This document shows, piece after piece, positions 8,522 to 25,000 of a DNA stretch of 64,000 bases; the stretch's first letter is position 1; every line of letters begins with the position of its first letter. Made by a program: the position numbers and the translations under genes. Origin of the DNA: Macrostomum lignano (Eukaryota). The stretch is taken from the NCBI GenBank assembly GCA_002269645.1, contig NIVC01002119.1, forward strand, positions 107,866-171,865. The letters run 5' to 3'. Below the pieces are notes generated by a model. That model was not told where the DNA came from. It saw only the letters and a program-made list of their open reading frames with translations, and searched no databases.

Positions 8522-10991
8522 AGCTGAAAACAATTACTGTGTCTACTGTTTTTTGAAAATTTTCAGTATCACGATAGCTGTAGGTAGTTGTTTTCGTGGT
8601 TTTACCTAGGATCATGCTCTAATATAGACTCAATCTCGTTCCACGATAGCCTAGCAATACGCTTTACTTTCTTCAATGAACTTGATAGAAATTGTTGTGG
8701 TTGGCTGGACCTTGCCTCAAATTAGCTCAGATACGCTGGCACTGTACAAACGTACATTCATTCCGCTTCTCCTGATCTAAAAGAAGGTTGGGTAAACTGT
8801 ACTGTTGTAAATTCATTCCACTGCCCCACTTCAGTAGTTTTTCTAAGCTTTTCTTCCTGCCTATGCGCTGCAGCTTTTTGACCAGCCAAACTAACACGGT
8901 TCTTCAAACCTCAAAACTGATTCTAAGTACATTTATGATATAGATTTATGTAAATGCATACTACTATAGCCTAAAGGAGCTAGGATCGTGTACGTAATCA
9001 GCTCCTGCGGTTGATCAGCAGGATATTTTCACGACGAGCTATGCAGAGTGAAGACACCTTTGCATGCTCTCGTGGATCACATTCACCTTCACACGTTACA
9101 CGAAGATACATGTACTCCACTATATAGTTCATTATCCACTGCAACACTTCCTAGCTATATGTGATCTCATTTACCACGATGTATATGTACACATCTAATT
9201 AGCATCACTCAGCAAATTAAAATTGCAAACACAACAGCTATTGGTATTGGCGTCTCATGGCGCTCCCTACTAAATGTTGTTCCTGGTCAAAGAAAAAAGC
9301 CCAGAACAGAACCCGGGGCAATATCAGCACCAGCTGTGGGCAGTACAGCTCGGCACGGAATGAGTTGGTGTGCTAACTCAGGAATCGACCACAAGGCGCA
9401 GTAATATTTTGGACCATCAGCAGGCCGACGTTGCTCGCTTCGCATCCAGTCTATCCAGTTGTCATTAGATCCTTAGGTGTCGAGGATAGCCGGGTGAAAT
9501 CGTTGAAATATCTAAGCGGAGAGAGCAGCTTGTTCTATTTTTCTGTTCTGTATTTATATGTCCCTATGTGTAATAAGATTTTCAGGCACTGAGAAAAATT
9601 TATATCTAATATGGTTTTGCCATTTCCTAAAAAATGACTCATGGAATCATCTTTAGAGTGAATGATTATTTTTGGGTCCAGGCATCTAGGTTAAAAATAG
9701 CAAATGTGACTTAAATAAAATTTCCCATTTGGCATGATTTCCCGCGCGAAAAAATAAACCCATAGAAGGCATAACAAACTTTGTACGTAGCAAATACGGT
9801 GGCTTAGTGCGGTGCAAACGAGCCACCAATCGCTGGAAAGATTTTCAACCGGATTTATTTGATATTTGAGGGTACTTGCACATGTAGCCATGCTGATGCA
9901 ACGGTATGGTCACGAATTACAGCCAGCTCGTATTGTTTTGAGAATCTCACTCTCTAAAATTCCGCAAACAACGCGAGCGCAATTGTCGTGTTGTATTTTT
10001 TAATTTTTCGTGACCATCTTTTTCTAAGATATATCAAATCAAATCATGATTATGACTCCATAGAGGAGCTAGGCGTAGAGATTGTTCTAGCCGGTAGCCC
10101 TAGCTTGAGCCAAATGCGCCAGGGCCAGATGTTTGCATACTCAGAGTAAGCTTTAACAGTTAACATTTTGTTACGGGTATTTTTTTGCTGTCAGTACGTT
10201 TCGTTGTACAGACATAGTAGGGTAGGCCTAATTTTAGATGTTGACAACAATAGGTCAATTTTGAAAAGTATGTCTAGCATTAATAAATCTATCATCGCTA
10301 TCTACAACTATCAATACTTTTATGTCCATATATACTTACTAAGTATAGTAAAGTAGAGTGGCAAATAGATTATAGTTGTATAAAACTATTACTAAACTTT
10401 ATAAAATGGACTACTACATAGTCTGTTAAAAAGTTAACTTCTAAACTGTGCAACCCGAATTTATTATGGTTAATGCAATATAATTTTTATATTTTATACA
10501 AAAATATAATATATTATAAAAAGCTTTTTGCAACAGCTTTGTTCTGCATATAATTAAATTTTTCTCTTTGGCATCAACTAGGCCAGGCAGGCCTATTTAA
10601 TGCTCTTTGTTTTTGACCACTTATATGTAAATTTTCCTCATAAGTATTGCACATAAGATATTATTAATCTAAAATACTAATAATAAAAAATGATAACACT
10701 ATATTTAGTCTATAATTAGAAATATATGTGCAACCCATTTCTCTGATTTATATAAATTATGCAATTTACTTTTTGACAAAAATTACTTTCTTATGAAAAA
10801 TACCCAAGCAAAAGCTAATATAATTTTGGGTAGATGGCAACAATAACTATGACTATAATAATAAAGCTAAATGCCTCATTATCTAATTAGTATAACACCT
10901 ATATTTTTGGTTAGGTAGGGCATAGAAATAGTATATAGGTGGTACATAGATTTCCCCTTCAAAAGTTGTATTCCAATGTGCATGTCACATT

Positions 10992-11395
10992 CCATAATCA
11001 GGAAGGTGGCACAATGTGCGCTGGAATAAATTTTTTGGGACGATCTGTGTGCTATTTATGCGCCGCCATCTATGCGCCATTTGTGCACTTTCTATGTGCC
11101 ATGTCTATGCCCTTATTTTACATATTTTATGTAAATTATATATTTTACAATAAATTTACAAAATTCTTAGAATTCATGTAGACCCAATATGCTATGCCAG
11201 TTTTATGCTAATAAAGATTCTATTCTAATTCCTTATGCACCAAAGTTGTGCATAGCACCGCATATGTCAGGGACCTTATGTGCCACAATTATGCGCCGCA
11301 TGCACTAGGGACCTCAGTGTGCACCATGATTGTGCGCCAAGGACCCCTTGTGTGTGCAGAATTTTCTATGGCAAAGGCCACCTTCCTGACTATGG
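10992..11395. mobile_element. Small MITE-like element
   Basis: 19-bp inverted termini CCATAATCAGGAAGGTGGC / GCCACCTTCCTGACTATGG (1 mismatch); internal degenerate ATGTGCC/GCGCC repeats; no clear TSD. Confidence 0.6.
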
Positions 11396-11727
11396 GGCAT
11401 ACTATGCTACCTTGATTATATTATAGTATTTAACTATATAATCTAAGCTAAATAGTTTTTAAACAACTTAAAACATTGTTTGTATTTATTTTCTATTAAA
11501 AGTGTCACATGATAAATTGAGATCAATGTTCAATAGCATTTAGCTAGCACAATAGCTTTGTATTTTATTTTGTTTTAACTCTAATAAATAATGTATTTAT
11601 TATTAAAGCTAGTAATGTTCTTTTATTATAGAATTATAAAATTTACAGTATGTGCGTATCTAAGCGCTTCCCCCATTCCAATAATTACAACCAATTCAAT
11701 CACTGTTCTTCCTTCCATTGCTTGCAG

Positions 11728-12726
11728 ATGTCCTTGCTGCTGTGGCACAGCCCGTCTGCCTTCGCAACTGCCCCGCCGCCTCAGACAGCGCAGCTTCGCC
11801 CTCCACCTCCGTCAACATCTGCTGCACAGTTTTCGCTGCCGCAGCAGCAGCAGCAGCAGGTGCACCATCAGCACCATCAGCACCATCACCTCATTGGCCA
11901 GCAGCTCCAGCAGCAGGCTGAGCAGCCGCAGAAGCCGCAGCGCCAGAAACGGCGCCGCTCCCAAGCGGAGACACCCCGGTTAAGTCTGTCTGAAAAACTC
12001 GCTCTGGTTGGCGCCTACGCGCGCTGCATCGAGACTGGCGCCCTGCCCGGCCGCGCCCTCATCGAGGCGGGCCGGCCGCCCGAGCTGAGCGAGCGTCATT
12101 GGAAGCAGCTGAAAGACAACATCCGGCACGCCATCAATTCCTATCGGGACTTCCGGCTGCGCAGGCCGCCTCCAGCCCCGCCTGCCGACTCGCCCGAATT
12201 CCTCCGCCACTACATGGGCAGGCGGGGCGCCGCTACCGCCGTGGCTGCAGCCGCTGCCGCCGCCAGCTCGGGCGGCCTCCCGCTGCCGCACGCTGCCCAG
12301 CCGCCAACGCAGCCTCCGGCCACGCTGCCTCATCCTCATCCCGTGTCTGCGTTGCCCAGACTGTCCTCCCTTGTGATGGATGGCAACTATGTGTCCCTAA
12401 GCGCGGCAGCGGCCGCTGCGGCTGCAGCTTCCAGCGCTCCTCAACAACAACAGCCGCAACCGCCTCCGCCGCCGCCTCCGCCGCCGCCGCAGCAGCCGAA
12501 GAAGAGGCGGCCCCGCGAATCCACAGGCGTGACGCGGCTGACGGCACAGGAGAAGCGCGAGTTGAACCGCGCCTTTCGTCAGCAAATCGAGGAGGGCCGC
12601 CTGCCCGGCCGGTCGACCATCGAGGCGCTGCGGCCGCCGTCTCTGCTAGAAAAGTCCTGGCGCCAGCTGAAAGACAGTGTGCGCTGGTCCATACAGCTGT
12701 ACAAGCGGGGCAGGCTCGCGTTCTGA
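11728..12726 (+). CDS. Uncharacterised low-complexity protein with two ~57-aa Myb/SANT-like repeats (putative DNA-binding protein)
   Basis: GC-rich 332-aa ORF starting at ATG 11728 directly after a TTGCAG acceptor; repeats at 11977-12147 and 12535-12705 share 29/57 residues; polyQ/H, polyA and polyP tracts; basic NLS-like KRRR/KKRR before each repeat. Confidence 0.8.
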   Translation: MSLLLWHSPSAFATAPPPQTAQLRPPPPSTSAAQFSLPQQQQQQVHHQHHQHHHLIGQQLQQQAEQPQKPQRQKRRRSQAETPRLSLSEKLALVGAYARCIETGALPGRALIEAGRPPELSERHWKQLKDNIRHAINSYRDFRLRRPPPAPPADSPEFLRHYMGRRGAATAVAAAAAAASSGGLPLPHAAQPPTQPPATLPHPHPVSALPRLSSLVMDGNYVSLSAAAAAAAAASSAPQQQQPQPPPPPPPPPPQQPKKRRPRESTGVTRLTAQEKRELNRAFRQQIEEGRLPGRSTIEALRPPSLLEKSWRQLKDSVRWSIQLYKRGRLAF

Positions 12727-12913
12727 CGCCTGAAGCCTCCCCAGTTGTGTTGCTCCCAGATTTTCATTCATGTTTGGTTAACTGCATAAATTTTATCTGA
12801 CACTGTTGTAGTTGCTGTTGAACTGAACTGTTTTGTCTACCTCTGTACCACCTTATTAATCCGTTTTAGCGATATCTTACTTGTAGCGATTGCGGCACTC
12901 TAGCTCAGAGCGT

Positions 12914-13968
12914 CCCCAACTCACCTCTGACTCTGCACTCCCCAACTCACCTATGACTCTGCACTCCCCAACTCACCTCTGACTCTGCACCCCCAACTCA
13001 CCTCTGACTCTGCACCCCCAACTCATATCTGACTCTGCACCCTCAACTCACCTCTGACTCTGCACCCCCAACTCACCTCTGACTCTGCACCCCCAACTCA
13101 CCTCTGACTCTGCACCCCCAACTCACCTCTGACTCTGCACCCCCAACTCACCTCTGACTCTGCACCCCCAACTCACCTCTGACTCTGCACCCCCAACTCA
13201 CCTCTGACTCTGCACCCCCAACTCACCTCTGATTCTGCACCCCCAACTCACCTCTGACTCAACACTCCCAACTCACCTCTGACTCAACTCTCCCCAACTC
13301 ATATCTGACTCTGCACTCACCAACTCATATCTGACTCTGCACTCCCCAACTCATATCTGACTCTGCACTCCCCAACTCATATCTGACTCTGCACTCCCCA
13401 ACTCATATCTGACTCAACTCTCCCCAACTCATATCTGACTCTGCACTCACCAACTCATATCTGACTCTGCACTCCCCAACTCATATCTGACTCTGCACTC
13501 CCCAACTCATATCTGACTCTGCACTCCCCAACTCATATCTGACTCAACTCTCCCCAACTCATATCTGACTCAACACTCCCCAACTCATATCTGACTCTGC
13601 ACTCCCCAACTCACCTCTGACTCAACACTCCCAACTCACCTCTGACTCAACTCTCCCCAACTCATATCTGACTCTGCACTCCCCAACTCACCTCTGACTC
13701 AACACTCCCCAACTCACCTCTGACTCAACACTGCCAACTCACCTCTGACTCAACACTCCCAACTCACCTCTGACTCAACTCTCCCCAACTCACCTCTGAC
13801 TCAACACTCCCAACTCACCTCTGACTCAACTCTCCCCAACTCACCTCTGACTCAACACTCCCAACTCACCTCTGACTCAACTCTCCCCAACTCATATCTG
13901 ACTCTGCACTCCCCAACTCACCTCTGACTCAACACTCCCCAACTCACCTCTGACTCAACACTGCCAAC
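12914..13968. repeat. ~26-bp minisatellite, ~40 copies
   Basis: CCCCAACTCACCTCTGACTCTGCACT and variants (CATATCT, CAACACT). Confidence 0.95.
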
Positions 13969-14513
13969 TAGTGCTAGTGTTTTTAGAAGTTCTGAACCGC
14001 CTGTGTATGATGATGAAAGGCCATCAAATGGCTGCTCATATCTGCTGCAATCGCAGCGCATCACTCCAAAACCCTATCAATCAGTTTACTTGTGGATGTT
14101 TACCAAATAAATTGACTGTCTGGAATGCATTGAAACTGATTCAGATTTTCAATATTGCAGCCCCTGCTCCGCGACTCTGTTCTGTTAAATTGTTGTGCAG
14201 TTTCAAACTGTTTAAATCTTCTATGTTGTTTTGAAGTGTAAGCCATTTTTCTGTGAATATATTTTAATCTTGGTTATGGCGCTAAAGTATTGTTCTGCAT
14301 GGGATCATGCCCTCCCGTGTCTGCAATTCCTCTCTGTGTTGTCTGTAGCAGATCTGTGCGAACCACACGCGGTTGAATAGATTGAGAATAATCTCCTTGC
14401 AATATTACACACGTGTATTTAGTTTTACTGCGATTGTATTGATGTTGCTGAACTGACTTTGCCTTGCCGACTTCATCCCTTTTTTACCTGCGACACCCAC
14501 CTAATTTTACCAC

Positions 14514-17500
14514 CAAACCCTCCTGTCTCCCTCTACCCAACCCTCCTGTCTTCCTCTACCCAAACCCCCGTCTCCCTCTACCCAACCCTCCTGTCTCCCT
14601 CTACCCAACCCTCCCGTCTCCCTCTACCCAACCCCCGTCTCCCTCTACCCAACCCTCCTGTCTTCCTCTACCCAACCCCCCGTCTCCCTCTACCCAACCC
14701 CCCGTCTCCCTCTACCCAACCCTCCTGTCTCCCTCTACCCAACCCTCCTGTCTCCCTCTACCCAACCCTCCTGTCTCCCTCTACCCAACCCCCGTCTCCC
14801 TCTACCCAACCCTCCTGTCTCCCTCTACCCAACCCTCCTGTCTCCCTCCACCCAACCCCCCGTCTCCCTCTACCCAACCCCCCGTCTCCCTCTACCCAAC
14901 CCTCCTGTCTTCCTCTACCCAACCCCCGTCTCCCTCTACCCAACCCCCCGTCTCCCTCTACCCAACCCTCCTGTCTCCCTCTACCCAACCCTCCCGTCTC
15001 CCTCTACCCAACCCCCCGTCTCCCTCTACCCAACCCTCCTGTCTTCCTCTACCCAACCCCCCGTCTCCCTCTACCCAACCCCCCGTCTCCCTCTACCCAA
15101 CCCTCCTGTCTCCCTCTACCCAACCCTCCTGTCTCCCTCTACCCAACCCTCCTGTCTCCCTCTACCCAACCCCCCGTCTCCCTCTACCCAACCCTCCTGT
15201 CTCCCTCTACCCAACCCTCCTGTCTCCCTCCACCCAACCCCCCGTCTCCCTCTACCCAACCCCCCGTCTCCCTCTACCCAACCCTCCTGTCTCCCTCTAC
15301 CCAACCCTCCTGTCTCCCTCTACCCAACCCTCCTGTCTCCCTCTACCCAACCCCCCGTCTCCCTCTACCCAACCCTCCTGTCTCCCTCTACCCAACCCTC
15401 CTGTCTCCCTCCACCCAACCCCCCGTCTCCCTCTACCCAACCCCCGTCTCCCTCTACCCAACCCTCCTGTCTTCCTCTACCCAACCCCCCGTCTCCCTCT
15501 ACCCAACCCCCCGTCTCCCTCTACCCAACCCCCCGTCTCCCTCTACCCAACCCCCGTCTCCCTCTACCCAACCCCCGTCTCCCTCTACCCAACCCCCGTC
15601 TCCCTCTACTTAACCCCCCGTCTCCCTCTACCCAACCCCCGTCTCCCTCTACCCAACCCCCCGTCTCCCTCTACCCAACCCCCCGTCTCCCTCTACCCAA
15701 CCCCCGTCTCCCTCTACCCAACCCCCCGTCTCCCTCTACCCACCCCCGTCTCCCTCTACCCACCCCCGTCTCCCTCTACCCACCCCCGTCTCCCTCTACC
15801 CACCCCCGTCTCCCTCTACCCACCCCGTCTCCCTCTACCCACCCCATCTCCCTCTCTCCCCAACCCTCCTGTCTCCTTCTACCCAACCCTCCCATCTCCC
15901 TCTATCCAACCCATTCGTCTCCATCTACCCACCCCCGTCTCCCTCTACCCACCCCGTCTCCCTCCCCCAACCCTCCCATCTCCCTCTACCCAACCCTCCC
16001 ATCTCCCTCTACCCAACCCTCCTGTCTTCCTCTACCCAACCCCCCGTCTCCCTCTACCCAACCCCGTCTCCCTCTACCCAACCCTCCTGTCTCCCTCTAC
16101 CCAACCCTCCTGTCTCCCTCTACCCAACCCTCCTGTCTCCCTCTACCCAACCCCCGTCTCCCTCTACCCAACCCTCCTGTCTCCCTCTACCCAACCCTCC
16201 TGTCTCCCTCCACCCAACCCCCCGTCTCCCTCTACCCAACCCCCCGTCTCCCTCTACCCAACCCTCCTGTCTCCCTCTACCCAACCCTCCTGTCTCCCTC
16301 TACCCAACCCTCCTGTCTCCCTCTACCCAACCCCCGTCTCCCTCTACCCAACCCTCCTGTCTCCCTCTACCCAACCCTCCTGTCTCCCTCCACCCAACCC
16401 CCGTCTCCCTCTACCCAACCCCCGTCTCCCTCTACCCAACCCTCCTGTCTTCCTCTACCCAACCCCCGTCTCCCTCTACCCAACCCCCGTCTCCCTCTAC
16501 CCAACCCCCGTCTCCCTCTACCCAACCCCCGTCTCCCTCTACCCAACCCCCGTCTCCCTCTACCCAACCCCCGTCTCCCTCTACTTAACCCCCCGTCTCC
16601 CTCTACCCAACCCCCGTCTCCCTCTACCCAACCCCCGTCTCCCTCTACCCAACCCCCCGTCTCCCTCTACCCAACCCCCGTCTCCCTCTACCCAACCCCC
16701 GTCTCCCTCTACCCACCCCCGTCTCCCTCTACCCACCCCCGTCTCCCTCTACCCACCCCCGTCTCCCTCTACCCACCCCGTCTCCCTCTACCCACCCCCA
16801 TCTCCCTCTCCCCCAACCCTCCTGTCTCCTTCTACCCAACCCTCCCATCTCCCTCTATCCAACCCATTCGTCTCCATCTACCCACCCCGTCTCCCTCTAC
16901 CCACCCCCGTCTCCCTCCCCCCAACCCTCCCATCTCCCTCTACCCAACCCTCCCATCTCCCTCTACCCAACCCTCCTGTCTCCCTCTACCCAACCCTCCT
17001 GTCTCCCTCTACCCAACCCCCCGTCTCCCTCTACCCAACCCTCCTGTCTCCCTCTACCCAACCCTCCTGTCTCCCTCCACCCAACCCCCGTCTCCCTCTA
17101 CCCAACCCCCGTCTCCCTCTACCCAACCCTCCTGTCTCCCTCTACCCAACCCTCCTGTCTCCCTCTACCCAACCCTCCTGTCTCCCTCTACCCAACCCCC
17201 CGTCTCCCTCTACCCAACCCTCCTGTCTCCCTCTACCCAACCCTCCTGTCTCCCTCCACCCAACCCCCCGTCTCCCTCTACCCAACCCCCCGTCTCCCTC
17301 TACCCAACCCTCCTGTCTTCCTCTACCCAACCCCCGTCTCCCTCTACCCAACCCCCGTCTCCCTCTACCCAACCCCCCGTCTCCCTCTACCCAACCCCCC
17401 GTCTCCCTCTACCCAACCCCCGTCTCCCTCTACCCAACCCCCGTCTCCCTCTACTTAACCCCCCGTCTCCCTCTACCCAACCCCCGTCTCCCTCTACCCA

Positions 17501-17850
17501 ACCCCCCGTCTCCCTCTACCCAACCCCCGTCTCCCTCTACCCAACCCCCCGTCTCCCTCTACCCAACCCCCGTCTCCCTCTACCCACCCCGTCTCCCTCT
17601 ACCCACCCCGTCTCCCTCTACCCACCCCCGTCTCCCTCTACCCACCCCGTCTCCCTCTACCCACCCCATCTCCCTCTCTCCCCAACCCTCCTGTCTCCTT
17701 CTACCCAACCCTCCCATCTCCCTCTATCCAACCCATTCGTCTCCATCTACCCACCCCCGTCTCCCTCTACCCACCCCCGTCTCCCTCCCCCAACCCTCCA
17801 TCTCCCTCTACCCAACCCTCCCATCTCCCTCTACCCAACCCCCGTCTCCC
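14514..17850. repeat. 21-23-bp C-rich minisatellite, ~3.3 kb
   Basis: CCTGTCTCCCTCTACCCAACCC / CCCGTCTCCCTCTACCCAACC units; source of the artefactual 1272-aa ORF. Confidence 0.97.
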
Positions 17851-17906
17851 GCTGCCCAACTCCCCCCAACCCCAGCAACTCACGCACTGCCGGTGCCCGC
17901 CCGCAG

Positions 17907-18686
17907 TACGGCTGGGTCCGCACCAAACTGCAGGGCGCCGGAGGCCGCGCCTCTGAGTCGCTGCTGCCGCTGTTCAATCGCGGAGACGCGGCCACCTCGT
18001 CCAGCAGCTCGGCTTCCACCGGCTTCGGCCTACTGGCCTCGTCGGCCTCCTCGTCATCGCTGTCGGCGAATTCCTCGGCTACTGCGGCGGTGGCCTCTTC
18101 AACTGGCGATCACCTGGCTGGAGCCGCCGCGGGGAATGCCGGCGAGGCGGACGATCCGTCCTCGGGCGCCAGCCTGTCGGGCTGGTTCGGCTCCTCCAGC
18201 CTGCTGTCCGGAGCGGCCGAGCGGGACCCGCTGCTCCGCTGCCTCGGCCTGTCCCGCAAGCAGCGGGTGCTGGCCTTCGTGACCCTGCTGCTGCTGGGCA
18301 GCCTGTTCCTGTCCCTCAGCCTGGTCTTCCTGCCCATGGTGCTGCTCAAGGCCCGCCGGTTTGCCGTGCTGTACTCCATGGGCTCGCTCTGCCTGCTGCT
18401 GTCATTCTCCGCCCTGTGGGGCCCGGTGAATCACCTGCGCCACCTGGTCACCGGGCCCAGGCGGCCGTTCACCTGCGCTTACCTGCTGATGCTGGCCGCC
18501 ACTCTCTATTCCGCCATGGGCCTGCGCTCCGGACCTCTGGCTCTGCTTTTCGTCTGTCTGCAGGTGGCCGCCCTGCTGTGGTACCTGATCTCCTACCTGC
18601 CCGGCGGCCAGCGGGGCATCCGGTTTCTCACATCCGTATTTTATTCCGCCGCCAGCCGCACAGCTAAGACCACCCTGCCCATCTGA
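17907..18686 (+). CDS. SFT2D3: Vesicle transport protein SFT2 family (SFT2C-like); start codon not found in cis
   Basis: Got1/Sft2 domain LSRKQRVLAF...KARRFAVLYSMGSL...WGPVNHLRHL...LWYLISYLPGGQRGIRF and C-terminal TLPI. The frame stays open upstream of the track ORF to the repeat edge (YGWVRTKLQGAGG...) with no in-frame ATG before the TM region. Confidence 0.85.
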   Translation, partial: YGWVRTKLQGAGGRASESLLPLFNRGDAATSSSSSASTGFGLLASSASSSSLSANSSATAAVASSTGDHLAGAAAGNAGEADDPSSGASLSGWFGSSSLLSGAAERDPLLRCLGLSRKQRVLAFVTLLLLGSLFLSLSLVFLPMVLLKARRFAVLYSMGSLCLLLSFSALWGPVNHLRHLVTGPRRPFTCAYLLMLAATLYSAMGLRSGPLALLFVCLQVAALLWYLISYLPGGQRGIRFLTSVFYSAASRTAKTTLPI

Positions 18687-20650: not shown

Positions 20651-20889
20651 TCGGAACAGTTTGTTTAAGTCCCGAGGGTCTCGTGACAATCGCTCCAGAA
20701 AAAAGCTTTTCATCTCATAGACTTTGAGTCAAAGACAACGATTTCCCCGAATGATATTGAGTATTACCGACTTAAATCTCATAAAACGAAAAGTGTTAGA
20801 AATATCATATCGCTGTTTTCCATCTCCACTTTCCCAGCACCTGTTAGTTTCTTGGAAACAGACTCAACTTTTCACCGCCCGCAGCCAGC

Positions 20890-23800
20890 ATGGACGACAT
20901 TGTGGCCTGGGTCCGCACCGGCAACGCAGTCCAGGTGCGCCTGTGGCTGGAGAACACGGAGAACGACCTGAACCAGGGCGACGACCATCGCTTCTCCCTG
21001 CTGCACTGGGCCGCCTGGGACGGCCAGACCGGCATCGCCGACCTGCTGCTGAGCCGCGGCGCCCGCGTTAACGCCACCAACATGGGCGACGACACGCCGT
21101 TGCACATCGCCGCCTCTCGCGGCCACCACGGGCTCGTGTCCCGGCTGCTCAAGCAGCGCCCGGCAATTAACGCAGTTAATGAGCACGGCAACACGCCGCT
21201 GCACTACGCCTGCTTCTTCAACCACGAGGAGACGGCCGTTGAGCTCGTGAACCAGGGCGGCCTGGTCAGCCTGGAGAATCGCTACGGCCAGACACCGCTG
21301 GACCTGGCCAGGCCCGCCCTGGTGCGCCAGCTGCGCCACCTGGCCAGGGAGCTGGGACAGGTCCGACCGCTTGAGCACTGCTTTGAGCTTGCCTAGGCCT
21401 GACTGACTGACTTGCCCACTCTCTCCCTGCCTTCCCCGCTCTCTCCCTGACTTCCCCACTCTCTCCCTGCCTTCTCCACTCTCTCCCTACCTTCTCCACT
21501 CTCTCCCTGCCTTCCCGCTCTCTCCCTGCCTTCCCCACTCTCTCCCTGCCTTCCCCGCTCTCTCCCTGCCTTCCCCACTCTCTCCCTGCCTTCTCCACTC
21601 TCTCCCTGCCTTCCCCGCTCTCTCCCTGCCTTCCCCGCTCTCTCCCTGCCTTCCCCACTCTCTCCCTGCCTTCCCCGCTCTCTCCCTGACTTCCCCACTC
21701 TCTCCCTGCCTTCTCCACTCTCTCCCTGCCTTCCCCGCTCTCTCCCTGCCTTCCTCACTCTCTCCCTGCCTTCCTCACTCTCTCCCTGCCTTCCCCGCTC
21801 TCTCCCTGACTTCCCCACTCTCTCCCTGCCTTCTCCACTCTCTCCCTGCCTTCCCCACTCTCTCCCTGCCTTCCCCGCTCTCTCCCTGCCTTCCCCACTC
21901 TCTCCCTGCCTTCCCCGCTCTCTCCCTGCCTTCCCACTCTCTCCCTGCCTTCTCCACTCTCTCCCTGCCTTCCCCGCTCTCTCCCTGCCTTCCTCACTCT
22001 CTCCCTGCCTTCCTCACTCTCTCCCTGCCTTCCCCACTCCCTGCCTTCCCCACTTATCTCTGACATCCACACTTATCCCTGACATCAAACTCCACCCGCC
22101 CACCACGCCAGGAGGTGGAGATGCGGCAGCCGCACAACACCTCGGACCCGCTGGGCGCGCAGACCTGGCGCACCCGGCCAACAAACCCCACGCTGAGCCG
22201 GCAGCCGGGAATCCAGTACGAGCAGCTCAACTTGCGCTCCCGCCTGGCCGGCCGGCACGGCACGGAGCTGTGGCGCGGCACCTGGCAGGATCAAGACATC
22301 GTTGCCCGGCTGTTCCGACCGAGGCCGCAGGCGGCCGCTCGACTGAGACGCGAATTCAACGAGCAGCTGCCCAGACTGCGCATCTTCAACAACACCAACG
22401 TGCTGCCCGTGCTGAGCGCCGTCATCTCCGACCAGCGCCTGGTGCTGGTGTCCCAGTTCATGCCCTACGGCTCGCTGTTCGACGTGCTGCACTCCGGACA
22501 CGGTGGGGGCTGGCTGCGGGGTCATGACCTGGCTAAGAATCAGGAATGGGGCTGGCTGCGGGGTCATGACCTGGCTAAGAATCAGGGATGGGGCTGGCTG
22601 CGGGGTCATGACCTGGCTAAGAATCAGGGGTGGGGCTGGCTGCGGGGTCATGACCTGGCTAAGAATCAGGGATGGGGCTGGCTGCGGGGTCATGACCTGG
22701 CTAAGAATCAGGGATGGGGCTGGCTGCGGGGTCATGACCTGGCTAAGAATCAGGGATGGGGCTGGCTGCGGGGTCATGACCTGGCTAAGAATCAGGGATG
22801 GGGCTGGCTGCGGGGTCATGACCTGGCTAGGAATCAGGGATGGGGCTGGCTGCGGGTTCATGACCTGGCTAAGAATCAGGGGTGGGGGTTGGCTGCGGGG
22901 TCATGACCTGGCTAAGAATCAGGGGTGGGGCTGGCTGCGGGGTCATGACCTGGCTAAGAATCAGGGGTGGGGCTGGCTGCGGGGTCATGACCTGGCTAAG
23001 AATCAGGGGTGGGGCTGGCTGCGGGGTCATGACCTGGCTAAGAATCAGGGGTGGGGCTGGCTGCGGGGTCATGACCTGGCTAAGAATCAGGGGTGGGGCT
23101 GGCTGCGGGGTCATGACCTGGCTAAGAATCAGGGGTGGGGCTGGCTGCGGGGTCATGACCTGGCTAAGAATCAGGGGTGTAACACTGGTTGTGGGGTCAT
23201 GACCTGGCTAAGAATCAGGGGTGGGGCTGGCTGCGGGTCATGACCTGGCTAAGAATCAGGGGTGGGGGTTGGCTGCGGGGTCATGACCTGGCTAAGAATC
23301 AGGGGTGGAGCTGGCTGCGGGGTCATGACCTGGCTAAGAATCAGGGGTGGGGCTGGCTGCGGGGTCATGACCTGGCTAAGAATCAGGGGTGGGGGTTGGC
23401 TGCGGGGTCATGACCTGGCTAAGAATCAGGGGTGGGGCTGGCTGCGGGGTCATGGCCTGGCTAAGAATCAGGGGTGGGGCTGGCTGCGGGGTCATGACCT
23501 GGCTAAGAATCAGGGGTGGGGGTTGGCTGCGGGGTCATGACCTGGCTAAGAATCAGGGGTGGGGGTTGGCTGCGGGGTCATGACCTGGCTAAGAATCAGG
23601 GGTGGGGCTGGCTGCGGGGTCATGACCTGGCTAAGAATCAGGGGTGGGGCTGGCTGCGGGGTCATGACCTGGCTAAGAATCAGGGGTGGCGGGCTGGCTG
23701 CGGGGTCATGACCTGGCTAAGAATCAGGGGTGGGGCTGGCTGCGGGGTCATGACCTGGCTAAGAATCAGGGGTGTAACACTGGTTGTGGGGTCTTGGCCA

Positions 23801-24464
23801 GCCATTAGCAACTTTTGTAACTTTTTTCGAAACATTCTACGGTTGCTACTATGAGTAATCCTGTTGCCCCGCCAGACATCATCATTGACGCCAACAAGGC
23901 CATGGGATTCGCTCTGGACATTGCCAAAGGCATGGACTTTCTCACCAAACTGGAGCAGCTGCTGCATCACTTTCAGCTCAACTCAAAGCACGTGATGGTG
24001 AGCAGGAAAGTTGCTTTGATTATCAAGCCATGGTTGATAATGCCCGTGTTTGCACTTGATCACCCTTCCAGGTAGACGAGGACCTCACCGCCCGCATCAG
24101 CTTAGCGGACTGTCGCTTCGTGTACCACCAGCGGGCGCAGGAGTACCACCCCTACTGGATGTCGCCCGAGGCGCTGCAGAAGCCGCCGCAGGACATCAAC
24201 ACCACCGCCGCCTTCATGTGGAGCTTCGGCATCCTGCTGTGGGAGCTGGAGACCCGCGAGGTGCCCTTCGGCAGCCTCGGCCCCATGGAGGCCGGCTTGA
24301 AAATCGCCGTCGAGGGCCTCCGGATCTCCTGCACGGCGCCGGGCTTCTCCAAGCACACCAGCAAACTCATCCAGCTGGCCACCAACGAGGAGGCCGGCCG
24401 GCGGCCTCGGTTCGACATGGTGGTCCCGATTCTGCAGAAAATTCTGCGCAAGACTGAGGCCTGA
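20890..24464 (+). CDS. ILK: Integrin-linked kinase (ankyrin repeats + pseudokinase), 4 exons, ~458 aa
   Basis: [33 protein letters not shown] matches the ILK N-terminus; later [70 protein letters not shown]. Exons 20890-21360, 22112-22502, 23876-23997, 24072-24464; all GT-AG with compatible phases (0,1,0). Confidence 0.96.
21415..22050. repeat. 20-bp pyrimidine-rich minisatellite filling ILK intron 1
   Basis: CTCTCTCCCTGCCTTCCCC(A/G) units. Confidence 0.95.
22503..23790. repeat. 42-bp minisatellite (~30 copies) filling ILK intron 2
   Basis: GGGGTGGGGCTGGCTGCGGGGTCATGACCTGGCTAAGAATCA; starts exactly at the intron GT. Confidence 0.96.
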
Positions 24465-24528
24465 GTTGAAGGGTGAAGTTCCCTGTCTGAAGACCCCGTT
24501 TTATTGCCTGAAGTCATGCAACCAATGT

Positions 24529-25000
24529 CCTGAAGCCACTCAGCCCATGTCCTGAAGCCACCTAATTCAAAGCCTGAAGCCACCAGCCCATGTCCTGAAG
24601 CCAACTAATTCAAAGCCTGAAGCCACCAGCCCATGTCCTGAAGCCACTCAATTCAAAGCCTGAAGCCACCCAATTCAAAGCCTGAAGCCACCAGCCCATG
24701 TCCTGAAGCCACTCAATTCAAAGCCTGAAGCCACCCAATTCAAAGCCTGAAGCCACCAGCCCATGTCCTGAAGCCACCCAATTCAAAGTCTGAAGCCACA
24801 CAGCCCATGTCCTGAAGCCACCCAATCCATAGTCTGAAGCCACCAGCCCATGGCCTGAAGCCACCCAATCCATAGCCTGAAGCCACACAGCCCATGTCCT
24901 GAAGCCACCCAATCCATAGCCTGAAGCCACCAGCCCATGGCCTGAAGCCACCCAATCCATAGCCTGAAGCCACACAGCCCATGTCCTGAAGCCACCCAAG
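24529..25000. repeat. Composite CCTGAAGCCAC-core minisatellite in/after ILK 3' UTR
   Basis: CCTGAAGCCAC alternating with CAGCCCATGT, CCAATTCAAAG and CCAATCCATAG. Confidence 0.9.

What the first reader, a model, noticed from the sequence alone, without database searches (positions are those of the whole stretch)
17876..18686. SFT2 gene with no start codon of its own: candidate for an initiator AUG donated by a trans-spliced leader
Seen: the SFT2 frame is open from the repeat edge, but the first in-frame ATG lies inside the TM domain (LPMVLL), and no upstream ATG-bearing exon is evident. A branch-point-like CTCAC (17879-17883) lies ~24 nt before GCCCGCCCGCAG (AG 17905-17906), an acceptor resembling those of ILK and GABBR2. 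The next base (17907) is exactly phase 0, so ATG+TACGGCTGG gives MYGWVRTKLQ... Established: flatworm spliced leaders end in AUG, which can initiate translation in Schistosoma. Inference: this gene may depend on SL trans-splicing to have any start codon.
Basis: partly seen in the sequence, partly recalled or inferred. Interest (0 to 1): 0.78.

Follow-up and report, generated by a model that had tools for sequence, protein, structure and literature searches.

The report
SFT2 gene started by spliced-leader AUG
A vesicle-transport (SFT2) gene of the flatworm Macrostomum lignano has no start codon in the genome and most likely takes it from the AUG at the end of the trans-spliced leader; this mechanism is already documented in flatworms, so it is a clean new example, not a new phenomenon.

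Summary
The window is the last 64 kb of M. lignano contig NIVC01002119.1 (assembly Mlig_3_7). An intronless Got1/Sft2-family ORF runs 17907-18686. There is no ATG in any frame on the + strand from 14443 to 18135. The first in-frame ATG (18336, residue 144) sits at the end of the first membrane segment. An acceptor, CGCCCGCAG, ends at 17906, so 17907 is phase 0.

Three findings support the leader-AUG reading:
- The GenBank CDS of this locus is 5'-partial and starts exactly at 17907. Its annotation cut transcripts at peaks of leader-bearing reads.
- The first residues, YGWVRTKL, align with the extreme N-terminus of insect orthologues (MANLKSEL). Only about one Met is missing.
- A 56%-identical paralogue has its annotated 5' end at the same codon.

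The M. lignano leader ends in ...TTGCATG. In Schistosoma mansoni more than 40 cDNAs are reported to need the leader AUG (Cheng et al. 2006).

I saw no leader-junction reads or protein data, so use of the AUG is inferred.

By-product: Mlig_3_7 was polished with RNA-seq, and acceptors appear overwritten with leader bases (TCAG to CATG). This probably created the paralogue's "genomic ATG".

Verdict: interpretation supported; new member of a known kind; modest interest.

The parts
14512..17866 (+). 23-bp C/T-rich tandem array (about 150 copies). It forms most of the presumed outron upstream of the acceptor and is ATG-free in all frames.
   Evidence: TRF. No + strand ATG from 14443 to 18135, and the 3 kb upstream of the acceptor are 82% pyrimidine. 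Array length differs among the three genomic copies.
17879..17883 (+). Branch-point-like CTCAC, 22 nt upstream of the acceptor AG. Function not tested.
   Evidence: Read directly from the sequence. Identical in all three copies.
17898..17906 (+). Proposed trans-splice acceptor CGCCCGCAG (AG at 17905-17906).
   Evidence: The GenBank CDS/transcript 5' end falls on the next base in copies L005 (= this window) and L002. The same 9-mer forms the ILK acceptor at 20876-20884.
17907..18686 (+). Intronless SFT2 (Got1/Sft2 family) coding sequence: 259 genome-encoded codons plus TGA, with no initiator codon.
   Evidence: All 4 substitutions between copies are synonymous third-position changes in this frame. 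The N-terminal YGWVRTKL aligns with the N-termini of the paralogue and of insect proteins.
17928..17933 (+). Second candidate acceptor CTGCAG. The next base, 17934, is also phase 0. It fits the published [T/C]TNCAG motif.
   Evidence: No annotation 5' end falls here.
18136..18282 (+). First AUG an mRNA without the leader would present. It is out of frame and opens a 48-codon ORF.
18336..18338 (+). First in-frame genomic ATG (Met144), at the end of the first transmembrane segment. Starting here would delete that segment.
   Evidence: The Pfam domain starts at residue 122.
11725..12726 (+). Upstream same-strand gene (332 aa, no Pfam family). Its ATG at 11728 directly follows a CAG acceptor. Possible first gene of a polycistron.
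   Evidence: The repeat-adjusted spacer to SFT2 is 781 nt.
20876..20892 (+). Downstream ILK gene 5' end: acceptor CGCCCGCAG, then CCAGC, then its own ATG at 20890. The leader AUG would be out of frame here.

Best explanation
The locus is one copy of a Macrostomum lignano SFT2 (Got1/Sft2-family, SFT2D3-like) gene. Its genomic coding sequence starts at codon 2.

Proposed mechanism:
1. The pre-mRNA is transcribed through a long ATG-free pyrimidine-rich tandem array. It may be part of a polycistron: 332-aa gene, SFT2, ILK.
2. The 35-nt spliced leader (...AAUUUAUUGCAUG) is trans-spliced to the acceptor CGCCCGCAG| at 17906/17907.
3. This puts the leader's terminal AUG in phase 0 directly before TAC GGC TGG, so translation yields M-YGWVRTKLQ...

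Shown: the gene structure, the lack of any usable genomic AUG, the position of the annotated 5' end, and the conservation of the N-terminus.

Inferred: that leader-bearing reads end at this junction, and that ribosomes initiate at the leader AUG.
For: 1. Gene and frame. Pfam Got1/Sft2 match at E 4.8e-28. The closest proteins are M. lignano SFT2 entries, all labelled 'partial'. All 4 substitutions between the window and copy L002 are synonymous third-position changes in this frame, including one at 17954 in the N-terminal part.

2. No start codon. There is no + strand ATG from 14443 to 18135. The first AUG (18136) is out of frame. The first in-frame AUG is Met144, inside the first membrane segment.

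3. Annotated 5' end. The window equals NIVC01002119.1 (L005 is collinear with it at offset 11906). Its GenBank CDS, P0012, starts at L005:6001 = window 17907, right after CAG. Copy L002 starts on the same base, read in another frame because of a G4-to-G3 homopolymer difference. That annotation cut transcripts at peaks of leader-containing reads (PMC5730564). Neighbouring genes ILK and DSS1 also begin exactly after CAG.

4. N-terminus. YGWVRTKL aligns with paralogue LTWIKSRL and with insect MANLKSEL/MATLKSDL, where the Met is the true N-terminus. So only about one residue is missing.

5. Paralogue SFT2-B (56% identical, AT-rich). Its annotated 5' end lies at the homologous codon in three copies.

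6. Species and precedent. The leader ends in ATG, and 30-39% of genes are trans-spliced. Wiberg et al. treat the final ATG as a start codon. Per PMC9851317, Cheng et al. 2006 reported the leader AUG in frame in 28% of S. mansoni trans-spliced transcripts and required by more than 40 cDNAs.

7. No cis exon. No phase-0 ATG...|GT[AG]AG exon lies in the 9 kb upstream. No ATG is hidden in the array in any of the three copies.
Against: - No leader-junction read, cDNA, Ribo-seq or peptide was available. The protein collection held no transcript-derived copies of this gene.
- The third genomic copy, L008, has its annotated CDS starting 12 nt further in (CGC, equivalent to 17919), not at the acceptor. 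The annotation boundary is therefore noisy.
- The acceptor CCGCAG departs from the enriched [T/C]TNCAG motif at position -5. A better-fitting in-frame site lies 27 nt downstream.
- The leader AUG has a weak context (U at -3, U at +4). It must also be bypassed in the neighbouring ILK mRNA, where it is out of frame, so initiation at it may be inefficient.
Confidence: 0.8

Rival explanations
1. The CAG at 17904-17906 is an ordinary cis-splice acceptor. An unrecognised upstream exon supplies the 5'UTR and the ATG, in the spacer at 13957-14511, further upstream, or missing from the assembly.
For: ATGs exist in the unique spacer at 14007-14442. Array length varies between copies, so this region is hard to assemble. 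I saw no reads.
Against: - The SL-informed transcript models of two copies stop exactly at the acceptor and are 5'-partial.
- No phase-0 ATG...|GT[AG]AG exon occurs in the 9 kb upstream.
- The N-terminal alignment leaves room for only about one residue.
- All three copies share the same array-to-acceptor junction.
Confidence: 0.06
2. The mRNA is trans-spliced, but the protein does not start at a leader AUG joined at 17907. Either the leader joins at the second in-frame acceptor (17933|17934, giving M-GAGGRAS...), or translation starts at a non-AUG codon or at Met144.
For: - CTGCAG at 17928-17933 fits the published trans-acceptor motif better, and 17934 is phase 0.
- The annotated start in copy L008 lies between the two sites.
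- The leader AUG has a weak context and is bypassed in ILK.
Against: - The WVRTKL motif between the two sites is conserved with the paralogue and with insect proteins. It would be lost.
- Starting at Met144 would remove the first membrane segment.
- An out-of-frame AUG at 18136 precedes Met144.
Confidence: 0.08
3. The copy is a decaying duplicate, or an assembly artefact, that has simply lost its start codon. M. lignano is a hidden polyploid with many redundant copies.
For: One copy (L002) carries a frameshift. The genome is highly duplicated.
Against: - Three copies share an identical ATG-less 5' end.
- All substitutions between copies are synonymous.
- The L002 frameshift is a single-base homopolymer difference in a PacBio-based assembly.
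- The diverged paralogue has the same architecture.
Confidence: 0.04

Closest known systems
Leader-AUG-initiated mRNAs of Schistosoma mansoni (Cheng, Cohen, Ndegwa & Davis 2006, J Biol Chem 281:733; cited in PMC12582326 and PMC9851317)
   Same: A flatworm spliced leader ending in AUG is trans-spliced in frame to an ORF that has no AUG of its own, and so supplies the initiator Met.
   Different: This is a different species (a free-living macrostomorph) and a different gene. Here the evidence is genomic and annotational only, whereas the schistosome cases rest on cDNAs and translation assays. I could not read the original paper. The figures I use (28% in frame, more than 40 dependent cDNAs) come from PMC9851317.
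M. lignano SL trans-splicing and operons (Wudarski et al. 2017, PMC5730564; Ustyantsev & Berezikov 2021, PMC8629364)
   Same: The same 35-nt leader. The transcript 5' end is defined at a CAG acceptor. Same-strand neighbours are separated mostly by repeats, with repeat-adjusted spacers under 1 kb.
   Different: In the text I searched, those papers do not discuss use of the leader ATG as a start codon or list genes that depend on it. The acceptor here deviates from their TTNCAG motif at one position.
slORFs: ORFs created by spliced-leader addition (Song et al. 2023, PMC9851317)
   Same: The start codon is contributed by the leader rather than by the gene.
   Different: slORFs in nematodes, Oikopleura and trypanosomes mostly use near-cognate NUG codons and are often alternative ORFs. 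Here the leader AUG would start the main, conserved protein.
Sft2 / SFT2D vesicle-transport proteins (Pfam PF04178 Got1/Sft2-like)
   Same: Domain match, several hydrophobic segments, a conserved C-terminal ...K(T/S)xLP(V/I), and the N-terminal [LIV]-[KR]-[ST]-x-L motif seen in insect orthologues.
   Different: About 100 residues of Ser/Ala-rich low-complexity linker lie between the N-terminal motif and the domain. There is no genomic initiator codon.

Membership tests
Got1/Sft2-like family (PF04178) | Profile match above Pfam's gathering score | tested here: met
   98.3 bits against a cut-off of 24.6, E 4.8e-28, covering profile positions 2-110 of 110.
Got1/Sft2-like family (PF04178) | Multi-pass membrane core | tested here: met
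   Kyte-Doolittle windows give hydrophobic segments at about 119-150, 152-171 and 205-233. The core is 50-70% identical to other SFT2 proteins.
SL trans-spliced genes of M. lignano | Mature mRNA 5' end lies immediately after an AG acceptor with no upstream cis donor | tested here: met
   The annotated CDS/transcript start at 17907 follows CAG. No consensus donor exon lies upstream.
SL trans-spliced genes of M. lignano | RNA reads carrying the 35-nt leader joined at that site | not testable with these tools
   Indirect only: the Mlig_3_7 annotation defined such ends from leader-read peaks. No reads or transcript contigs were reachable.
SL trans-spliced genes of M. lignano | Enriched acceptor motif [T/C]TNCAG | tested here: inconclusive
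   The site reads CCGCAG, with C instead of T at -5. The motif was found in only 9551 of 21754 sites, so it is not obligatory. The ILK acceptor is the same 9-mer.
Leader-AUG-dependent mRNAs (Cheng et al. 2006 class) | The leader ends in AUG | tested here: met
   The M. lignano SL is CGGTCTCTTACTGCGAAGACTCAATTTATTGCATG (PMC8629364). See also Wiberg et al..
Leader-AUG-dependent mRNAs (Cheng et al. 2006 class) | Acceptor in phase 0 with the conserved ORF, and no genomic in-frame AUG before essential parts of the protein | tested here: met
Leader-AUG-dependent mRNAs (Cheng et al. 2006 class) | Translation actually initiates at the leader AUG | not testable with these tools
   Needs Ribo-seq, N-terminal proteomics or a reporter assay.
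M. lignano operon (Ustyantsev & Berezikov criterion) | Adjacent same-strand genes, downstream gene trans-spliced, repeat-adjusted spacing under 1 kb | tested here: inconclusive
   Spacers are 781 nt (332-aa gene to SFT2) and 937 nt (SFT2 to ILK) after subtracting TRF arrays. I measured from stop codons, not poly(A) sites, and did not subtract transposon content.

The most novel reading that the evidence does not exclude
Dependence on the leader AUG is not a quirk of one copy. It would be an old, conserved feature of both M. lignano SFT2 paralogues, which are 56% identical and differ greatly in base composition. In this reading both have their acceptor in phase 0 at the same codon.

The 'genomic ATG' in front of the B paralogue in Mlig_3_7 would then be leader sequence written into the assembly by Pilon polishing with RNA-seq. 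That implies an unknown number of erased acceptors and false start codons at trans-splice sites across this widely used reference genome.
Probability: 0.5. Interest if true: 0.45.

Novelty: new member of a known kind. Interest (0 to 1): 0.3.

Why it matters
- Annotation. The GenBank proteins of this gene family are labelled "partial" although they are probably complete apart from a leader-encoded Met. Annotation pipelines for trans-splicing species need to add the leader before calling ORFs.
- A test case. M. lignano is the flatworm with working transgenesis. A small intronless gene that cannot be translated without the leader AUG is a convenient reporter for testing trans-splicing and leader-AUG initiation in vivo.
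- Assembly quality. The by-product may matter more in practice. Polishing an assembly with RNA-seq in a trans-splicing organism seems to overwrite acceptor sites with leader bases. This can fake start codons and destroy AG acceptors in the reference.

Tried and rejected
1. Retrocopy idea. The paralogue's upstream sequence resembles the leader's 3' end: 12 of the last 16 nt in L001, top 2 of 3474 ATG contexts. I first read this as a retroposed trans-spliced mRNA. I dropped it because the similarity does not extend further (4 of 19 for the rest of the leader). The DSS1 acceptor also shows that leader bases overwrite acceptors within this assembly, which fits the documented RNA-seq polishing.

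2. Paralogue's ATG as ancestral. I first took the paralogue's genomic ATG as proof of an ancestral start codon at that position. It is now considered probably artefactual. Either way it marks the same start position.

3. Window identity. I assumed the window was NIVC01000004.1, since P0001 is listed as window-encoded. K-mer anchoring showed it is NIVC01002119.1.

4. Searches that found nothing:
- Gene identifiers Mlig020859, Mlig022203, Mlig009178 and Mlig016751 in papers and supplements.
- Cheng et al. 2006 is not held in the library.
- Rfam scan of the window.
- Leader-like 16-mers in the window at up to 3 mismatches.
- Transcript-derived (Logan) proteins of this gene; cluster members are all from the NCBI genome annotation.

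5. Similarity between the SFT2 and ILK 5' ends. A shared 9-10-mer at the acceptor and a shared in-frame 13-mer are individually weak (E 1.4 and 0.07). Left as unexplained.

Full report
**What is there.** The best protein matches are Macrostomum lignano entries. K-mer anchoring shows that locus L005 (NIVC01002119.1, assembly Mlig_3_7, GCA_002269645.1) is collinear with the window at a constant offset of 11906. The window is therefore the last 64 kb of that contig.

Positions 17907-18686 (+) encode 259 residues and a stop. They give a full-length Pfam Got1/Sft2 match at residues 122-232, E 4.8e-28. The gene has no introns. Upstream lie a 26-bp array (12913-13956), a 555-nt unique spacer, and a 3.36-kb array of a 23-bp C-rich unit (14512-17866).

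**Checking the observation.**
- The SFT2 frame is open upstream to 14505.
- In-frame ATGs occur only at 18336, 18378, 18489 and 18516.
- The + strand has no ATG in any frame from 14443 to 18135.
- The ATG at 18136 is out of frame and opens a 48-codon ORF.
- Met144 (18336) lies at the end of the first hydrophobic segment. Starting there would remove that segment.
- AG is at 17905-17906, CTCAC at 17879-17883, and 17907 is phase 0.
- A second acceptor-like site, CTGCAG|, ends at 17933 and also leaves phase 0.
- No phase-0 ATG...|GT[AG]AG mini-exon exists in 9000-17906.

**Independent support from the published gene models.** Mlig_3_7 transcripts were cut at peaks of RNA-seq reads that carried the spliced leader, using the TBONE pipeline. 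ORFs were then called with TransDecoder (PMC5730564).
- The GenBank CDS of this very locus (P0012, 259 aa, YGWVRTKLQ...) is 5'-partial. It starts at L005:6001 = window 17907, the base after CAG.
- A second copy, L002 (PAA65787.1), starts on the same base. It is read in another frame because of a G4-to-G3 homopolymer difference at window 18131.
- A third copy, L008, starts 12 nt further in, so the boundary calls are not perfectly consistent.
- Neighbouring genes behave the same way. The ILK model begins right after CGCCCGCAG|, and the DSS1 model right after TTTCAG|.
One of them lies in the N-terminal part. That frame is therefore under constraint from its first codons.

**Only the Met is missing.** In a MAFFT alignment, YGWVRTKL (this gene) and LTWIKSRL (paralogue) line up with MATLKSDL, MANLKSEL and MANLKTEL of hemipteran/insect SFT2 proteins. 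In those proteins the Met is the true N-terminus. Two closer relatives from unidentified sequencing runs (L003, L004) carry their own ATG 9-12 nt after a TTNCAG-type acceptor. There is no room for a further coding exon beyond an initiator codon.

**The paralogue and an assembly artefact.** Paralogue SFT2-B is 56% identical, AT-rich and lies downstream of DSS1. It is present in three copies: L001, L006 and L007. Its annotated 5'-partial CDS begins at the homologous codon (CTG ACC TGG...). However, the assembly shows CATG (GCATG in L001) immediately before that codon, with no AG.

At the DSS1 acceptor, L001 and L007 read CAACTTTCAG|AAATTT. L006 reads CAACTTCATG|AAATTT. Those three bases are the only differences between L006 and L007 in the roughly 90 nt upstream, and they convert TCAG into the leader's last four bases.

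The Methods of PMC5730564 state that the assembly was polished with Pilon using RNA-seq mapped by STAR. I infer that leader-bearing reads overwrote the acceptors. On that reading:
- The CATG in front of SFT2-B is a footprint of leader-to-CTGACC reads.
- The real sequence there is probably ...TTNYAG|.
- SFT2-B also takes its AUG from the leader.

If the ATG is real instead, it still marks the same start position. An earlier idea, that SFT2-B is a retrocopy carrying a leader remnant, was dropped. The similarity to the leader is limited to the last 16 nt.

**Mechanism.** The M. lignano leader is CGGTCTCTTACTGCGAAGACTCAATTTATTGCATG. Spliced at 17906|17907, it gives ...UUGCAUG UAC GGC UGG..., which translates as M-Y-G-W-V-R-T-K-L. 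The pre-mRNA may be polycistronic. The 332-aa gene (11728-12726), SFT2 and ILK (ATG at 20890) lie on the same strand, and each starts at a CAG acceptor. Their repeat-adjusted spacers are 781 and 937 nt, below the 1-kb operon criterion of PMC8629364. Use of the leader AUG is inferred. Its context is weak, and in ILK it is out of frame (ATG|CC AGC ATG GAC), so ribosomes must be able to skip it.

**Comparison with what is known.**
- All reported flatworm leaders end in AUG (PMC12582326).
- According to PMC9851317, Cheng et al. 2006 found the leader AUG in frame in 28% of S. mansoni trans-spliced transcripts and required by more than 40 cDNAs.
- Wiberg et al. note that the Macrostomum leader's final ATG is a translation start codon.

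The finding is therefore a new, clean member of a known class, not a new mechanism. I found no paper naming this gene.

**Verdict.** Direct junction reads or protein evidence are still needed. Interest is modest. The most useful by-product is the evidence that RNA-seq polishing wrote leader bases into Mlig_3_7 at trans-splice acceptors.

Noticed in passing
L006:2199-2202 vs L007:1732-1735 and L001 (DSS1 acceptor); L001:5996-6000, L006:5993-5997, L007:5996-6000 (SFT2-B 5' end): Acceptor bases appear replaced by the spliced leader's last bases (TCAG to CATG; GCATG in L001), exactly at annotated transcript 5' ends. Mlig_3_7 was Pilon-polished with RNA-seq, so these are probably leader bleed-through artefacts that fake ATGs and erase AG acceptors.
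   Followed up: partly
window 11725-12726, 17907-18686, 20876-24600 (+): Three same-strand genes (an unnamed 332-aa protein with an internal duplicated ~60-aa segment, SFT2, and ILK) each begin at a CAG acceptor. They are separated almost only by tandem arrays, with repeat-adjusted spacers of 781 and 937 nt. This is a candidate operon.
   Followed up: partly
window 17898-17924 and 20876-20919: CGCCCGCAG occurs only twice on the + strand, at the SFT2 and ILK acceptors. CTGGGTCCGCACC (xxC TGG GTC CGC ACC, W-V-R-T, same frame) also occurs only twice, a few codons into each gene. Each match is weak on its own (E 1.4 and 0.07) but they are collinear. This may be a short sequence exchange between neighbouring 5' ends, or coincidence.
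   Followed up: partly
window 20883-20892: In ILK the leader AUG would be out of frame (ATG|CC AGC ATG GAC), 5 nt before the real start. It would create an overlapping upstream ORF, so leaky scanning past the leader AUG must occur.
   Followed up: no
L002:6220-6225 (= window 18128-18131): A G4-to-G3 homopolymer difference makes GenBank protein PAA65787.1 carry about 75 frame-shifted N-terminal residues. This is probably a PacBio-type assembly error rather than a pseudogene.
   Followed up: partly
window 14512-17866; L002 and L008 equivalents: The length of the C-rich 23-bp array differs strongly among the three copies. The distance from the last upstream ATG to the acceptor is 3464, 1619 and 471 nt. 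This is either true variation or collapse in assembly.
   Followed up: partly
window 11728-12726: The upstream 332-aa protein has two similar segments (…LPGRxxIEAxRPPxLxExxWKQLKD…). It has no Pfam family above threshold, only a sub-threshold VIR_N hit. Its ATG directly follows the acceptor, so the leader would add an in-frame extra Met.
   Followed up: no
L003:440-480, L004:455-495: The closest non-M. lignano relatives (Logan runs ERR14224704 and DRR639055, organism unknown) keep their own ATG 9-12 nt after a TTNCAG acceptor. The loss of the genomic ATG therefore seems specific to the M. lignano lineage.
   Followed up: no
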